Of a stretch of DNA of 64,000 bases, positions 12,570 through 18,563 are shown one piece after another. Source of the DNA: Lytechinus pictus (taxonomy: Eukaryota); assembly GCF_037042905.1 (NCBI RefSeq), contig NC_087259.1, forward strand, positions 28,210,001 through 28,274,000. Direction: 5' to 3'. The notes under the pieces were generated by a model. It had not been told where the DNA came from. It ran no database searches and saw only the letters and a list, made by a program, of their open reading frames with translations. The first letter of the stretch is position 1. Every line of letters starts with the position of its first letter. The position numbers and the translations under genes are program-made.

Positions 12570-15500
12570 ATGGGCAGAAACAATGCATCCAAATCTAAGA
12601 AAAAGGATAAGACGAAGGTAAAGCTCTCTGATGAAAAGCCCCAAGACTCGGACTCGGAGACAAAGAAAATAACTTCACATCTACCAAAGAAAGGCAAGTC
12701 TACTACCAGGAGCAGCAGAAATGGGGGGGGGGGGGGGGGGTAAGCTGGGTGGGCTTCAGCCCCCACTTTTTCTTCAAAACCGTTCCGTGGCCCTGACTAT
12801 AGTAGCTTATCACTGAGATGATGTTCTCTGTAATAAAAAAAATGACTCGATCTGTCTTTCAACGCCATGGAAAATTTAAATATTATCCTCATTTAGTTAT
12901 TGTGATTTAATGGAGAACTCTTTAAGTGTGAAAATAATAATAATAATGAGTGTGTCATCATTTGGTCACAATAAATGAATGTTATATTTTTGCGAATAAG
13001 CGCACATAACTTTTTTTCTTAACATGTGGTTTCGATTATATTTCCAGTGTTATGCTTGTTATATTTTTCTCTGCAAATTAAAAAGGATGGGTTGGACTTC
13101 ACTTGACCTAGGGAGAGGAAAATCTATTTTGAAATGAAAAGAAGTAGATCTAAGAATTTAAGTCTTAATCATTTATCAAACATAGAGACGAGAGAGATAT
13201 ACCACCAAACATTTAAGTTTATTGGAGCTTTGACTATTTGCTCTCCAGAAAAAAAGAAAACTTTTGAGATTCTACCTGATGATGATTTTAGCTTATAGTC
13301 GGACTCTCAAATATTCATGTCATAGTCTGTTTGTCTCTTCTATCCTTTCTCTTCAGTTTTTACAGTTTCAGTTGTATCTGGGCTTCTACTAGTTCTAGCT
13401 TCCTGTTTTTCATTTTTAGCCTGATTGAGTAATTATTTTGCAAATTCCTTTTCATAATTGTATTGCATTTCATGTTCATTTATATTCCTTCAATGTTTAA
13501 ATATTTTCCAATTTATACGTCTTTAGTGTTTATCAATATTGTTATTGTATGTACTGCCAATGGAGGACAAATTTCTATGTTTAATATGGACCAATAAATG
13601 AATCAGAATCTTGCTGACATTGATCTTTTGTAGGTGATGGAGATGCTGCTTCCTTAAAAGAGGAGCAGAAACAGAAGTTGAGCAGGACAAAGAAGTCTCA
13701 GAAAAACAAAGCTACATGTAGTGATAGTGTAAACGAAACAGAGGCTTCCAAGACGTATAGCAAGGAAAATGTTCCAAGGTTTGGCATGATGTTTTCTTAC
13801 AATCTTTATGCAAATCAGAGTTTTGTCAATATGCAATTTTTCATGCATGCCTAGAGCAAACTTTTTTCATTTTGAACAGACTCATATTTTCTAGTGTTGT
13901 GTGAATAGCATGGTCAAGAGAGATTCTTTCTTTGATAAAATTATTGAAAAATATTCATTAAAAAAAATATTATTTGACATTACATGTATGTGATTCTCAT
14001 ATAAGGACCATGATACGTAAAAATTCTGGTTAAGGTAATTGTAACCACAAATACCTCATTACTGTCCATGTTTCCAAGGAGTTTGCAATACGCAGCAAAA
14101 CATTGTTATATGTTTGCAGTTGAGCCCCGACCTCGCCTGGCTGGGTTTGAATATTATTTCTGTGACATTATTATATAAATTGGATTTTACCCCCCAAAAA
14201 AAACATGAATCAAGGTAGTGGATGATGATATGCTGAAAAAGGCTGGACATATTTGATGAATTACTGATTAAACTTGATCAACTTTATTAACATTTCTTTT
14301 AACATCTTTTGCTTCAGCAATTTACTTGATAATCTATAATTTTATATTCATATTCCTCACCAGCCCGAAAAAGAACACAAGGAAAAGGGAATCTCCGAGG
14401 TTTTTACCAAGTCCACTGGCTAAGATAGTTCCTATATTTGGGAAGAAAAGGCATGCTGTGCAAGCAAGCCTTAGTCAGGAAGATGAAAGACAGGAGAGTC
14501 CTGCAAACACAAGTGATTCACAGACTGGAGCAGAGGGTGGGATAGAATCTATATCTTTGGTTGTTACTGTCAAGGAAAAGGGGGAGATTGTTTCAAAGAT
14601 CTGTTCGAGATCAGATGAAGAGCTTAGAGAAAGTCAACGTCTCGTGACAGATACCAAAGTTGATTTTCACATCGTGAGCCATGAAACATCTGGTGAAAGT
14701 GAGAAGGATGTTTCAAAGGGGTCAGCTGATGAGCCAAAATCTGTGCCTTTTATAGACGAGATTCAATCAATATCTGATGCCTTGATAGATGAAAATAAGG
14801 ACCATGATAATGAAGAGGACCATGATAAAGAATCTGAAATAGATGATTATGTGATCCAAGATGAAGCTAACTTTGAGAGAGATGCTGAGGAAGAGAATGT
14901 AAAGGATCCTTTAAAGGTGATTAACAAAGAAGAAGTGATAGTTGCAGTGTGTCAGGCTGCTTCAGAAGAGATCAGAGTAGTTGGTCAGTCAGGGTCCAAT
15001 GAAGATTACCGTGAACACAATGCCTATGATGACAGTCAAGAATCAGATGGTAGAGGAATGTTGAGAGACGTAGCAGAGGATGGCTACCCAGTCAAAGCCA
15101 AGAAAGCTGGCACAGAACATGGACCCATTATTTCAGATGATGTGAAATGTTCCAGCATAGATGAAATAAAGATTCATTCAGACTCGGTAAATATTGATGG
15201 TAACCAAGATGTGGATAAAGAACAAAAGTGGATAAATTCACCTGGTAACACGGTATTTGTGGATATTTGTACAGTTACTGGGGCAAATGTGCCTGTTTGC
15301 ATAGATAATGAGGTCTCTAAATACAGTCCTGTTAAGGACCCTAAATGTGAGGTTAATGATTCAGTCAAAGGACAACAAGTTTCAAGTGATAGAAAAGATG
15401 GGGAACATGTGAACATAGAGGGCAAGGAAGATGTTCATGATCACATGCCAGAAGGAAAAGACATTAGTCGGGCAAAACCTGACATTAGAGCAATGTCAGA

Positions 15501-18500
15501 TGGTAACTCTAGATCTTGTTCAGGTATTACTTCAAATCCTCAACATAACTCTACCCACAGTGAAATGCCTCAAGAATTGCGTACAAGAGCTGATGTAATG
15601 GAAGTGGGAGTAGAAAGAGTAGGCAATGTGAACATTGTAGAGATATCTGGAGAAGGAACTGGTGACCTGCTAATGTACAATCCTAATTCCAACCTACAGT
15701 GTACATCTACTGAAGATATGAATGCACCAAGATGGGATAGTACACCGGTCTCTTCAAATAATCATCAGTCTTGCAATGATAGACTTCCACAAGCAAATGG
15801 CAATATTGATGGTGAAATCGATGGGTGCTCAGATCCACTGTGTGGGTCTACCCAGCTATTTGAAGTTCCTCTTGAAACCCATCCATCCAGTTCTCAAGGT
15901 GACAATGTAATGAAGATCTGTGGTAGTGATGATGAAGAGAAACCAAAAGAATCTGACAACTTTTCAGGATTGCAAGGGAAAGGAGATAAAAAAGGGAAAC
16001 TTAATGAAGACTATGGAACAGATGATAGGACAACTATCCCATCATTCAACTTAGATGTACCACAGTTATCGTGCAAGAAGATCACAGGTATGAGCACATG
16101 GTTAACTTGATCCCTCCCCCACTATAACGGTCTTGGATTTGATACTGAATTTTGATTAGTATAAATTATAATCTATTCTTGTGTCTTTACCATATTCTTT
16201 ACTTGAAATCATAGCTTTTCCAATTTATCAAGTATTTTTTCTGTGATTGTTGGGTTCCCGTCTTTTGATCTAAGAAGTGCTGCAGTTAGGTGACAAATTG
16301 TACCTCATAAATCATTTCTACATGGATGCTGCTACATGCCTATTACCATCTTTATCATTTCAATCTTACAAAAGATCAGTGACTTTTCAGGATTATGTTT
16401 TTTTTATACCAATAACCTTTTGGTCATGTATAGATATTTTACAAATTAAGAAGTAAAATGTTGCATATCTTTGAATTTGGTTACAAGTTCTTTTGATGTA
16501 AAAGATATTATTTGCCCATGCAAACAGAGATTAAGAGGTTATGATATCAACTAACATTAATATTGTTAACAATTCTTCTATCGCATTGGCATCTATATAA
16601 ATGACAGACACATTTACAGGAAATTCTGTTTTTTTTGTTGCTTCCTTGTCTCAAAGTAGGGCAGAATTTTCTGGAACAAGACCCTCTAGATGATGACATG
16701 ATAGACTTGACTGATTCTCAGATGATAGAGCTTGACCAACAGTGCAGTATGGTCAACCCATTGACCAAACCATTGACAGGTTGTGCAGCTACCCCAAAGA
16801 TGGGGACTGAAAAACTTCAAAGCAAGGTTGAGGACAAGGTTAGTTACTAAGTAATGGTTAGGTTGAGAAAGCCAATGAGCTGTTGAAGCTCCTTGAGTTA
16901 TACATTAGGTGCAATTAATGAAAATTATTATTGGCCGTGTGGCTTCAATGATATTGGACTGTATTAAGCTAAAAGGAAATTCTATCTTAACATGCACGGA
17001 AAACCTAGATATGATTCTGTTCTGAGGACAGGGGGGGGGGGGTTGTCCTACATGTGTAAAGGTTTCAAAATTATGAGTGGATTTGATCATATAAAAGGTT
17101 ACTATTTGAAAATACCATATCACATAGCAATGAACCAGGTATATACTTTGTTTAAAAAAAATTGTCACTATTACATACAAGTATTTAAACAGTAAAAACC
17201 AAGGATGTATTTCATTCTTAATATCAAATACCCTTTCCTTTCACAGGTTTATGTCAGTGTAGGTGTGCAGACACTAAATACCTGTACTGAGAAGTCAGAG
17301 TCTACCACTGTAGTACAGTCAATGATCAGAGATCTCCGACAACTTAAGTAAGAAAAAAAACGTGTTTTGTTTCATGAAAAGTTTTGGAAATAATCTTTCA
17401 AAAATTTCAATGATTTTAATTGGGTGAGAAGCACAGGCAATTGCCTGTTACTATGGTAACTCTCGGAGAAAACATCTGACAAATTATTTCATGAAACGCT
17501 ACCCTGAAGTCTTATCTTTTCTAACAGTATTAGTTATTGGCACTTTGACACTCGTTCTTTCTTTTTCTTGTGCGCCTCGGAATAGAATATTTCAAGATAG
17601 ATGGCGCCATATAAATGCCTATAGATTATTATTTCATCAGTTTGCAAATGTTGACAAAATGGGCCATCGGTATCATTCAGGTTCCTGTTTGATAAAATGT
17701 TAAAAAGACATTGTGAAATTCCAAGTTCTATAAATCCAGAATTTTTTTAGATGGTTGCAAATTGGCAATAGAATTTCAAGATGCTTTTTCAATGAAAAAA
17801 TTCTATAAAATATGGCCCTCTACAAATGTTCATTTCTCACATGTAACACCATTTATTTCAAAATTCAGTATTTCATCGTTTGGCGACTACTAATCACTTG
17901 TGATCAATCGTAAATTTAAAATACAACGATTTTGATTGCTTGAGAGTGGGCATATCCAACACTAACTACAAGCAAGTGTTCTTGACTACATGCCCATTAC
18001 CATTTTCCAATTGACTTCAATTTATTTTACTCGGCCTAGATCAAGCCTAGTCAAATTCTTTACATTTTTTCAGAAGGGGTGGGGAATGAGATGATCCTAA
18101 AGGGGGGTATCGCTGCCCATGCCTCAATTCTGGGCTGATTTCATTGCTTACTCCTTCCTTTTTTGTTGCTTGTCCATACCCACTCAAATAGATTAAAATC
18201 GTCTTCTGATTTTTTTTCCTCCACAGATTGGTTCAATCTATTGCTAATATTTGGTTACTAACGATGTTAAGAATGTTGATAATATGCAAACAACCATGAA
18301 GAAGTTTGTTCAGCCTTTGGTGCTCTTAATTTTTTTGTCCCCTTACTATTTCATAACTAAATGAGCTGTAATACCTTTACATAAAAACATGAATAGTTCA
18401 CTTTTGCTCCAAAATATATTGCAGCGCTACTGTGTTAGACCTCAAGAGACAGATGGATGGTTTCCGTAGACAGAGATCCCAATGTTCATCATCATCAAGC

Positions 18501-18563
18501 TATTCACAACAACACTGGAATGAGTATGGTAGAACAAGAGGAAAGCCATTTTATCAACAGTAG
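12570..18563 (+). CDS. BRME1: BRME1/C19orf57/MEIOK21-like protein (break repair meiotic recombinase recruitment factor), about 804 aa, mostly acidic and disordered
   Basis: Phase-consistent exons 12570-12693 (GC donor), 13634-13778, 14364-16087, 16657-16838, 17247-17347 and 18425-18563 sum to 2415 nt. Motifs SPLAKIVPIFGKKR (N-terminal), IDLTDSQMIELD, and C-terminal ESTTVVQSMIRDLRQLNATVLDLKRQMDGFRR parallel recalled BRME1 motifs (GRFVPQFAKSRK, LDFLPDSQIQDAL, [32 protein letters not shown]) in the same order. Gene existence is well supported; orthology is inferred. Confidence 0.68.

What the first reader, a model, noticed from the sequence alone, without database searches (positions are those of the whole stretch)
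12570..18563. Candidate invertebrate BRME1 (C19orf57/MEIOK21): the BRCA2-HSF2BP/MEILB2 meiotic partner outside vertebrates
Seen: a six-exon gene of about 804 aa, almost all acidic low-complexity sequence, whose key C-terminal motif is invisible in the ORF track because it is split across exons 5 and 6. Spliced, it reads ESTTVVQSMIRDLRQLN/ATVLDLKRQMDGFRR, aligning without gaps to the recalled BRME1 helix [32 protein letters not shown] that binds HSF2BP/MEILB2. Two further BRME1-like motifs (KIVPIFGKKR versus RFVPQFAKSR; DLTDSQM versus FLPDSQI) occur in the right order. Established: BRME1-HSF2BP-BRCA2 recruits RAD51/DMC1 to meiotic breaks and has been characterised in vertebrates. Inference: the module predates vertebrates and would be annotated here as an uncharacterised protein.
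Basis: partly seen in the sequence, partly recalled or inferred. Interest (0 to 1): 0.82.

Follow-up and report, generated by a model that had tools for sequence, protein, structure and literature searches.

The report
Sea urchin BRME1 meiotic gene candidate
This sea urchin gene, annotated only as "uncharacterized", is very probably the counterpart of vertebrate BRME1, the partner of HSF2BP/MEILB2 and BRCA2 in meiotic DNA-break repair. If so, this module is older than vertebrates.

Summary
Window 12570-18563 (+) is a six-exon, 804-aa gene, Lytechinus pictus LOC129277534. Spliced RNA contigs from two studies join every exon, including 17347 to 18425.

Sequence similarity to BRME1 is weak taken alone:
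- PDB phmmer finds one hit, BRME1 chain 8a51_B, at E 0.83.
- hhalign against 24 mammalian BRME1 gives P 0.0094.
- Pfam PF15710 (Brme1) finds nothing.

Independent tests agree with the BRME1 reading:
- The three most conserved islands between L. pictus and Diadema setosum are an N-terminal motif, a DSQ motif and a C-terminal helix. The same three, in the same order, are the most conserved in mammals, and they are the best hhalign pairings.
- The phase-2 intron that splits the Asn codon of the invariant "LN" in the helix is at the identical position in both urchins, a vole and a bat.
- The heptad core residues needed for MEILB2 binding in mouse (V548, L555, I562) align to V748, L755 and V762.
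- The genome encodes an HSF2BP orthologue with its alpha1 helix, about as diverged as the BRME1-like helix.
- A protein-language-model search of the C-terminus returns Brme1 clusters as its top three hits. The Diadema replicate did not.

Not shown here: physical binding and gonad expression. My probability that this is a BRME1 orthologue is about 0.8. It is a new member of a known kind.

The parts
12570..12693 (+). Exon 1, with ATG at 12570. It encodes the basic N-terminus (residues 1-41 plus the first base of Gly42). The donor is GC (GCAAGT at 12694).
   Evidence: Translation equals P0001. The joint 12691-12694 to 13632-13635 is present in RNA contigs of X1 and X9.
13634..13778 (+). Exon 2 (145 nt).
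14364..16087 (+). Exon 3 (1724 nt). It encodes the N motif and then the long acidic, poorly conserved region.
   Evidence: Only 25% overall identity to the Diadema orthologue.
14419..14451 (+). N motif AKIVPIFGKKR (residues 109-119). It corresponds to mammalian GRFVPQFAKPRK.
   Evidence: Second most conserved 12-aa window between L. pictus and Diadema, and third in mammals. It is the second-best hhalign local alignment, echinoid against mammal (score 19.9, P 0.27), and is colinear with the helix hit.
16657..16838 (+). Exon 4 (182 nt). The acceptor is NAGNAG, with an alternative AG three bases downstream.
16674..16745 (+). DSQ island EQDPLDDDMIDLTDSQMIELDQQC (residues 671-694). It corresponds to mammalian ELDFLPDSQIQDALD.
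   Evidence: Most conserved window between the two urchins, and fourth in mammals. It is the best hhalign hit once the N motif and helix are removed (score 16.9, P 0.4).
17247..17347 (+). Exon 5. From 17298 it encodes the first half of the C-terminal helix (ESTTVVQSMIRDLRQL plus AA of Asn759).
   Evidence: The phase-2 donor lies in the Asn codon.
17504..17633 (.). Dispersed repeat of about 130 bp inside intron 5. It is not part of the gene's function.
   Evidence: At least 1377 candidate copies in the genome at 87-91% identity. This explains the RNA word depth of about 2000. No Rfam match.
18425..18563 (+). Exon 6. It encodes the last base of Asn759, the second half of the helix (ATVLDLKRQMDGFRRQRSQ, to about 18488), the conserved tail W..YG.T...P, and the stop TAG at 18561-18563.
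   Evidence: The AlphaFold2 model has a helix at 746-780 with pLDDT 81-93, and the rest is below 50.

Best explanation
The gene is the echinoid orthologue of vertebrate BRME1 (C19orf57/MEIOK21).

Inferred mechanism, taken from the mouse and human structures 7Z8Z and 8A51. The protein is mostly disordered and acidic. It carries one C-terminal amphipathic helix (residues about 746-780). The 'a' heptad residues V748, L755 and V762 of this helix would pack with two copies of the N-terminal alpha1 helix of the sea urchin HSF2BP/MEILB2 into a parallel 2:2 four-helix bundle. That would keep HSF2BP in a defined oligomeric state while its armadillo domain holds BRCA2, and so support RAD51/DMC1 loading at meiotic breaks.

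Two further short motifs are conserved from urchins to mammals: the N motif [KR][FI]VPxF[GA]K and the DSQ motif. They are presumably docking sites for partners not yet known.

Shown here: the gene model and its splicing; the three shared conservation islands; the shared intron; the presence of HSF2BP with an alpha1 helix.

Inferred, not shown: binding to HSF2BP, and a meiotic role.
For: 1. PDB phmmer with P0001:700-804 gives a single hit among 177,635 sequences. It is BRME1 chain 8a51_B, 33 aa without gaps. The two-urchin profile again ranks BRME1 first. MAFFT independently places the human and mouse peptides in the same register.
2. hhalign of the echinoid alignment against 24 mammalian BRME1 gives helix to helix as top hit (score 31.5, P 0.0094). 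None of 100 column shuffles exceeded 20.8.
3. The next-best alignments are N motif to N motif and DSQ to DSQ. All three are colinear.
4. These three islands are the top-ranked conserved windows both between L. pictus and Diadema and among mammals.
5. A phase-2 intron splits the Asn codon of the invariant 'LN' at the same nucleotide in L. pictus, Diadema (L011), Microtus (L003) and Miniopterus (L012).
6. Mouse V548, L555 and I562 are required for MEILB2 binding (PMC11297322). They align to V748, L755 and V762, which are invariant between the two urchins.
7. An HSF2BP orthologue is present, with both an ARM exon (E 1.4e-9 to 7ldg_A) and an alpha1 exon. The alpha1 exon scores 13.7 bits against mouse alpha1. 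That is the same level of divergence as the BRME1-like helix, which scores 13.3 bits.
8. In the ESM-Atlas feature search with residues 655-804, the top three of 7.7 million clusters are all PF15710 Brme1.
9. AlphaFold2 predicts one confident helix at 746-780 in an otherwise disordered tail. Length, pI and the single large central exon resemble mammalian BRME1.
Against: - Pfam PF15710 does not match the protein or the genome in six frames.
- Every database E-value is non-significant (0.4-0.83). An unrelated peptide, hmp-2, scores almost as high against the echinoid profile.
- The N and DSQ alignments are individually insignificant (P 0.27 and 0.4).
- The Atlas scores (0.77-0.79) are below the tool's 0.9 mark. 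The Diadema C-terminus returned KRBA1, not Brme1, and the N-terminus returned nothing.
- Only echinoid relatives were found. No intermediate taxa bridge to vertebrates, and all vertebrate sequences used are mammalian.
- Only one intron is shared. The neighbouring introns differ in position or phase.
- There is no synteny with the mammalian BRME1-NANOS3 neighbourhood.
- The mouse DNA-binding residues R540 and R549 align to E740 and Q749.
- Tissue of expression is unknown.
Confidence: 0.8

Rival explanations
1. Chance resemblance. This would be an echinoid-specific, fast-evolving disordered acidic protein whose C-terminal amphipathic helix happens to look like the BRME1 helix. It would have no common ancestry with BRME1 and no HSF2BP binding.
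For: E-values of 0.4-0.83 against PDB, with an unrelated helix scoring nearly the same. No Pfam match. hhalign probability is only 4%. The Diadema Atlas search did not return Brme1.
Against: The tests made after the hypothesis was fixed all came out positive:
- identical intron position and phase in four species (about 1 in 100 by chance, given the mammalian intron density there);
- the second and third best profile alignments are the predicted colinear motif pairs;
- the same three islands are the most conserved in both clades;
- HSF2BP with an alpha1 helix is present;
- the top three Atlas clusters are Brme1.
Confidence: 0.13
2. A functional analogue rather than an orthologue. This would be an independently evolved or domain-shuffled HSF2BP-alpha1-binding protein that shares only the helix module with BRME1, for example through exon capture.
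For: Only the helix reaches even marginal significance. Introns flanking the other motifs differ between urchins and mammals. There is no synteny.
Against: The N motif and DSQ motif are also shared and lie at comparable distances from the termini. Overall length, charge and the large central exon are alike. Convergence would not explain an intron at the same nucleotide unless the exon pair itself were inherited.
Confidence: 0.05

Closest known systems
Vertebrate BRME1 (C19orf57 / MEIOK21 / 4930432K21Rik; Pfam PF15710 Brme1; structures 8A51 and 7Z8Z)
   Same: - An acidic, largely disordered protein of 600-800 aa.
- An N-terminal [KR][FI]VPxF[GA]K motif about 100 residues in.
- A DSQ motif 70-75 residues before the start of the C-terminal helix in both clades.
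- A C-terminal helix of about 35 residues with the 'a' positions V/L/(I,V) and invariant T, V, L, LN and F.
- A phase-2 intron in the Asn codon of LN.
- One large central exon.
- An HSF2BP partner gene in the genome.
   Different: - About 30% identity in the helix only. The rest cannot be aligned.
- No Pfam PF15710 match.
- The basic beta-cap residues that bind DNA in mouse (R540, R549) are E740 and Q749 here.
- The C-terminal tail differs (W..YG.T...P against ..SWRDL).
- Introns near the N and DSQ motifs lie elsewhere.
- The gene is not next to a nanos gene, unlike in the vole locus L003.
- BRME1 is described in the literature read here only as 'conserved in vertebrate species' (PMC7188823).
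Diadema setosum XP_072176817 (P0004) and Lytechinus variegatus 'cell wall protein IFF6-like' (P0003)
   Same: Clear orthologues. Diadema has the same six-exon plan, the same three islands plus the tail, and the same intron. The L. variegatus protein is 86% identical over exon 3.
   Different: Both are unnamed or misnamed. The L. variegatus model reads through the exon-3 donor and lacks exons 4-6, so it lacks the DSQ motif and the helix.
BRCA2 PhePP / FxPP 'P-motif' (KVFVPPFK; PMC11229353)
   Same: The BRME1 N motif (RFVPQFAK in mammals, KIVPIFGK here) resembles it by eye: a basic residue, an aromatic or aliphatic residue, V-P, x, F, then K.
   Different: It lacks the fourth-position proline that the paper calls essential. 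The urchins have Ile in place of the first Phe. phmmer of either N motif against PDB finds nothing. This is a lead only.

Membership tests
BRME1 (PF15710) | Match to the Pfam Brme1 profile above the gathering score (27 bits) | tested here: not met
   hmmscan of P0001, whole and in parts, finds no PF15710 hit at E up to 10. A six-frame search of the genome with PF15710 gives no match. The 100 hits carrying the family are all mammalian.
BRME1 (PF15710) | C-terminal MEILB2/HSF2BP-binding helix with hydrophobic 'a' positions (mouse V548, L555, I562) | tested here: met
   An ungapped 33-aa alignment to 8a51_B places V748, L755 and V762 at those positions. They are invariant in Diadema. hhalign P 0.0094. 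The helix is predicted at 746-780 with pLDDT 81-93. Residue roles come from PMC11297322.
BRME1 (PF15710) | Conserved N-terminal FVPQF motif and DFLPDSQ motif, colinear with the helix | tested here: inconclusive
   Both are the best remaining hhalign pairings and are colinear, but they are weak (P 0.27 and 0.4). In both clades they are among the most conserved windows.
BRME1 (PF15710) | Gene structure: phase-2 intron inside the Asn codon of the invariant LN of the helix | tested here: met
   L. pictus CTT AA|gt..ag|C. Diadema CTC AA|gt..ag|T. Microtus CTC AA|gt..ag|C. Miniopterus CTG AA|gt..ag|C.
BRME1 (PF15710) | A cognate HSF2BP/MEILB2 with an N-terminal alpha1 helix encoded in the same genome | tested here: met
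   G000:C8 about 35.2238-35.231 Mb. The ARM exon L008:6872-7030 hits 7ldg_A at E 1.4e-9. The alpha1 exon L008:4799-4942 aligns over 39 aa without gaps to 7z8z_A. Further ARM-like exons were read by eye.
BRME1 (PF15710) | Physical binding to HSF2BP alpha1 | not testable with these tools
   The single complex-prediction job (2:2) scored 0.29, below the 0.34 mark. The tool says this is neither support nor evidence against.
BRME1 (PF15710) | Germ-line or meiotic expression | not testable with these tools
   The gene is transcribed and spliced in runs of two studies. Runs X2 and X3 also hold words from the HSF2BP locus. Sample identities are coded, so the tissue is unknown.

The most novel reading that the evidence does not exclude
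Only three short elements of BRME1 have been kept since the last common ancestor of echinoderms and vertebrates: the HSF2BP-binding helix, the DSQ motif and the N motif [KR][FI]VPxF[GA]K. The N motif would be a degenerate PhePP-like site that contacts DMC1/RAD51 or another recombination factor directly. The ancestral BRME1 would then be a bivalent adaptor between HSF2BP-BRCA2 and the recombinase. The beta-cap DNA clamp described in mouse would be a later vertebrate addition, because its basic residues are absent in the urchin.
Probability: 0.15. Interest if true: 0.7.

Novelty: new member of a known kind. Interest (0 to 1): 0.58.

Why it matters
BRME1 was found in 2020 and has been treated as a vertebrate gene. 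The papers read here call it "conserved in vertebrate species" (PMC7188823), and I found no report of an invertebrate orthologue in the searchable library.

An echinoderm orthologue, together with an echinoderm HSF2BP that keeps its alpha1 helix, would place the HSF2BP-BRME1 pair, and probably the BRCA2-HSF2BP-BRME1 module, at or before the base of the deuterostomes.

It also reduces the functionally constrained part of BRME1 to three short elements. Two of these, the N motif and the DSQ motif, have no assigned function, which gives mammalian geneticists precise mutagenesis targets.

It suggests that the DNA-clamp residues are not ancestral.

L. pictus can be reared and gene-edited in the laboratory (my own knowledge, not checked here), so the prediction is testable.

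It is also a worked example of an orthologue missed by standard profile searches but recovered through conservation islands plus a shared intron.

Tried and rejected
- **Complex prediction** (urchin HSF2BP alpha1 exon x2 plus P0001:735-785 x2). Score 0.29, below the 0.34 mark, and the controls were not run. No verdict either way.
- **Pfam on the protein and its parts.** Only noise: SAM_KSR1_N and Trimer_CC at E above 0.1.
- **PF15710 against the genome.** Nothing.
- **The search for homologous proteins with exon 3 and with the C-terminus.** Only Lytechinus sequences.
- **Exhaustive HMMER with residues 655-804.** Only Diadema, plus two repeat artefacts, P0005 and P0006.
- **Atlas search of the N-terminus.** No usable hit. 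The Diadema C-terminus returned KRBA1 at 0.75.
- **Narrow mammalian island HMMs.** They score about 0 bits on the urchin proteins. In L. pictus the best position of each falls in the matching island; in Diadema only the helix HMM (its best of three weak stretches) and, out of register, the DSQ HMM land in their islands, and the N HMM reports no hit.
- **Synteny.** The window's neighbours are TMEM185A-like, CFAP77 and a Kelch protein, not the nanos gene seen next to vole Brme1. Uninformative at this distance.
- **HSF2BP probes.** The 42-aa ARM probe and the 41-aa alpha1 probe found nothing genome-wide. A third probe did.
- **N motif against PDB.** No hit for the urchin or the mammalian version, so the PhePP resemblance stays an eyeballed lead.
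- **Genomic DNA for tarsier and Phyllostomus BRME1.** Could not be fetched.
- **Literature.** The search for invertebrate HSF2BP or BRME1 gave nothing relevant. The armadillo-family evolution paper is not held.

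
Full report
**What is there**

The window comes from Lytechinus pictus (G000:C15:28210001-28274000). On the + strand, six exons translate to exactly the 804-aa NCBI protein "uncharacterized protein LOC129277534" (P0001):

| Exon | Coordinates |
|---|---|
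| 1 | 12570-12693 |
| 2 | 13634-13778 |
| 3 | 14364-16087 |
| 4 | 16657-16838 |
| 5 | 17247-17347 |
| 6 | 18425-18563 |

Intron 1 has a GC donor. Exon 4 uses the first AG of a NAGNAG acceptor.

Contigs of two runs from two different studies (X1, X9) are spliced at every junction, so they are RNA. They include a clean GT..AG join from 17347 to 18425. That join builds the C-terminal helix ...ESTTVVQSMIRDLRQL-N-ATVLDLKRQMDGFRR, with the Asn codon split AA|C. Two raw RNA-seq runs (X13, X14) show only sparse exon reads.

**Relatives**

Word-based and exhaustive searches found only echinoid relatives:
- an allelic or alternative L. pictus model (P0002);
- a truncated L. variegatus model misnamed "cell wall protein IFF6-like" (P0003);
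- one real distant orthologue, Diadema setosum XP_072176817 (P0004, 818 aa, E 5e-11 over the C-terminus).

L. pictus and Diadema are only 25% identical overall. Their identity is concentrated in four islands:
- AKI[VI]P[IV]FGKK (residues 109-118);
- DPLxxDMxDxTxSQMxELDxQC (673-694);
- the helix STxxVxxMxxDLxQLNxxVL....Q...FRxQRxQ (744-778);
- a tail, WxxYGxTxxxP.

A 12-residue sliding window ranks the DSQ island, the N motif and the helix as the three most conserved segments.

**Comparison with BRME1: sequence**

phmmer of residues 700-804 against all 177,635 distinct PDB sequences returns one hit at E up to 10. It is chain B of 8A51, "Break repair meiotic recombinase recruitment factor 1", at 13.3 bits and E 0.83, with 33 residues aligned without gaps. 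The two-urchin profile again ranks it first (E 0.4), but an unrelated peptide follows at E 0.49.

To obtain full-length vertebrate proteins I aligned the PDB-printed human and mouse peptides with the urchin C-termini. MAFFT put them in the same register. Using that alignment as the query returned about 100 mammalian BRME1 proteins, all carrying Pfam PF15710.

In 24 diverse mammals the invariant or near-invariant positions cluster in three places:
- SQNSVGRFVPQFAKPRK (about residue 95-115);
- ELDFLPDSQIQDALD (about 530-545);
- [33 protein letters not shown] (about 600-632).

These are the top-ranked conservation windows in mammals.

Profile-profile comparison (hhalign) of the echinoid pair against the 24 mammals gave three results:
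- The top hit is helix to helix over 38 columns, score 31.5, P 0.0094.
- The second alternative alignment is N motif to N motif, PLAKIVPIFGKKRHAVQA against SVGRFVPQFSNPRKTVAR, score 19.9, P 0.27.
- With both regions cut away, the best alignment of the remaining 609 x 477 residues is TDSQMIELDQQC.. against PDSQIQEALDAS.., score 16.9, P 0.4.

One hundred column-shuffled echinoid alignments gave top scores with mean 15.6, SD 2.1 and maximum 20.8. The reversed alignment gave 20.3.

So the helix match is well outside the shuffle null. The other two are individually weak, but they are exactly the predicted colinear pairings. Pfam's own Brme1 model does not detect the urchin protein or the genome. 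By the standard criterion the protein is outside the family as currently modelled.

**Comparison with BRME1: evidence independent of residue similarity**

*Shared intron.* In the vole Microtus ochrogaster genomic contig (L003) the last intron of Brme1 splits the Asn codon of ELSSL-N-RLIM after its second base (CTC AA|gtaagg...acag|C CGG). The bat Miniopterus natalensis has the same arrangement (CTG AA|gtaagt...gcag|C CGG). L. pictus has CTT AA|gtaaga...gcag|C GCT, and Diadema has CTC AA|gtgagt...ccag|T TCT.

This is the same codon of the same invariant residue in the same phase, in two echinoid orders and two mammalian orders. The C-terminal part of the mammalian gene has roughly one intron per 100 coding nucleotides. 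A coincidence at the exact nucleotide is therefore of the order of 1 in 100. This test was made after the hypothesis had been stated.

The neighbouring introns are not shared. The penultimate exon is 93 nt and starts in phase 2 in vole and bat. It is 101 nt in L. pictus and 110 nt in Diadema, starting in phase 0 in both. In mammals the N and DSQ motifs lie on the other side of the large exon's boundaries.

*Heptad core.* The mouse residues whose triple glutamate mutation abolishes MEILB2 binding and break localisation are V548, L555 and I562, the 'a' heptad positions (PMC11297322). They align to V748, L755 and V762, which are invariant between the two urchins.

*The partner is present.* A PDB-verified HSF2BP peptide found nothing in the genome. 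A second, 54-aa probe hit two places on contig C8. Around the one at 35.23 Mb, on the same strand, lie exons that read like the human protein:
- L008:6872-7030 hits HSF2BP 7ldg_A at E 1.4e-9.
- About 2 kb upstream, L008:4799-4942 encodes EYNEAFTSVKKTALKDLQTEIKTLKDNLNQTLTFDLIQSLAEEQELEQ. It aligns over 39 residues without gaps to the mouse alpha1 helix chain 7z8z_A, EEFVKVRKKDLERLTTEVMQIRDFLPRILNGELLESFQK, at 13.7 bits.

The partner helix's orthology is anchored by the adjacent armadillo domain. It is as diverged (13.7 bits over 39 aa) as the BRME1-like helix (13.3 bits over 33 aa). This weak similarity is therefore what a true orthologue would show at this distance.

*Language-model search.* A feature search of 7.7 million ESM-Atlas clusters with residues 655-804 returned three Brme1 (PF15710) clusters as its top three hits, at 0.79, 0.77 and 0.77. 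The tool warns that scores below 0.9 are leads only. The Diadema C-terminus returned KRBA1 and the N-terminus returned nothing. I count this as one modest, partly replicated indication.

*Architecture.*
- AlphaFold2 on the two-urchin alignment gives a single confident helix at 746-780 (pLDDT 81-93) in an otherwise low-confidence tail. This matches the T605-R638 helix of the human peptide (PMC10610910).
- pI is 4.6-4.9 in both clades.
- Length is 804-818 aa here against about 550-730 aa in mammals.
- Both clades have a single large central exon.

**What did not help or speaks against**

- There is no synteny. The window's neighbours are TMEM185A-like, CFAP77 and a Kelch-repeat gene. Vole Brme1 sits next to a nanos gene.
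- No bridging taxa were found. All vertebrate sequences used are mammalian, which narrows the profile.
- The basic residues that make the mouse beta-cap bind DNA do not appear conserved. BRME1 R540 and R549 and MEILB2 K26 (PMC11297322) align to E740, Q749 and a serine in L. pictus. If the orthology holds, the DNA-clamp activity may not be ancestral.
- Tissue specificity could not be read because run identities are coded. I can only say that words from the HSF2BP locus occur in runs X2 and X3 of the study that also holds this transcript.

**Weighing**

Four results were obtained after the hypothesis was fixed, and all agree with it:
- the shared intron;
- the two further colinear motif pairings, which coincide with each clade's own conservation islands;
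- the conserved heptad core;
- the presence of an alpha1-bearing HSF2BP.

I put the probability that this is a true BRME1 orthologue at about 0.8. Chance resemblance gets about 0.13. An analogue that shares only the helix module gets about 0.05. Binding to HSF2BP and a meiotic role are inferred, not shown.

**Novelty and interest**

The papers read here describe BRME1 only as conserved in vertebrates (PMC7188823). No paper in the searchable library mentions an invertebrate BRME1.

This is a new member of a known kind. It extends the HSF2BP-BRME1 pair to echinoderms. It also pinpoints three short elements, two of them without known function, as the conserved core of BRME1.

A specialist would probably find it useful rather than astonishing, because a conserved HSF2BP alpha1 helix already implies a partner. 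Interest is about 0.58.

Noticed in passing
window 17504-17633 (intron 5): A dispersed repeat of about 130 bp with at least 1377 candidate copies across the genome at 87-91% identity. It accounts for an RNA word depth of about 2000 in runs X1 and X9 and for many partly fitting raw reads. It has no Rfam match.
   Followed up: yes
P0003 (Lytechinus variegatus orthologue): It is annotated 'cell wall protein IFF6-like' and is 681 aa long. The model reads through the exon-3 donor (..KKITGMSTWLT..) and so lacks exons 4-6, which carry the DSQ motif and the helix. This is probably a mis-annotation.
   Followed up: partly
G000:C8:35223800-35231020 (+), loci L008/L009; second copy of one exon at G000:C8:31929876-31929977 (-), locus L004: This is the L. 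pictus HSF2BP/MEILB2 gene. One ARM exon, with identical flanking intron sequence, occurs twice on contig C8, 3.3 Mb apart and in opposite orientation. That could be a segmental duplication or an assembly duplicate.
   Followed up: partly
L008:9432-10000 and L009:1-36: The intron upstream of the HSF2BP exon TSLLLMSLYNLSINHKGL contains a tandem array (unit about 123 nt). The unit repeats the 5' part of that exon and its upstream intron sequence (..FTSLLLMSLYIFLYLPVCF.. many times).
   Followed up: no
L008:452-2784: Long ORFs that read like a non-LTR retrotransposon (reverse-transcriptase-like sequence, judged by eye only) lie about 2 kb upstream of the HSF2BP alpha1 exon, in an upstream intron or 5' flank.
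   Followed up: no
window 14419-14451; mammalian BRME1 residues about 100-112: The N motif ([KR][FI]VPxF[GA]K) resembles the BRCA2 PhePP recombinase-binding peptide KVFVPPFK printed in PMC11229353. It lacks the fourth-position proline that the paper calls essential. PDB phmmer finds nothing for either version.
   Followed up: partly
window 12721-12741: A run of about 20 G lies just inside intron 1, downstream of the GC donor. Reading exon 1 on to the GT after this run would break the frame. The GC donor at 12694 is the one used in the RNA contigs.
   Followed up: yes
window 4861-5310 (-), 36419-36838 (+), 60301-61459 (-): Neighbouring genes by Pfam are TMEM185A-like, CFAP77 and a Kelch-repeat protein. 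None matches the neighbourhood of mammalian BRME1, where nanos lies next to vole Brme1 in L003.
   Followed up: partly
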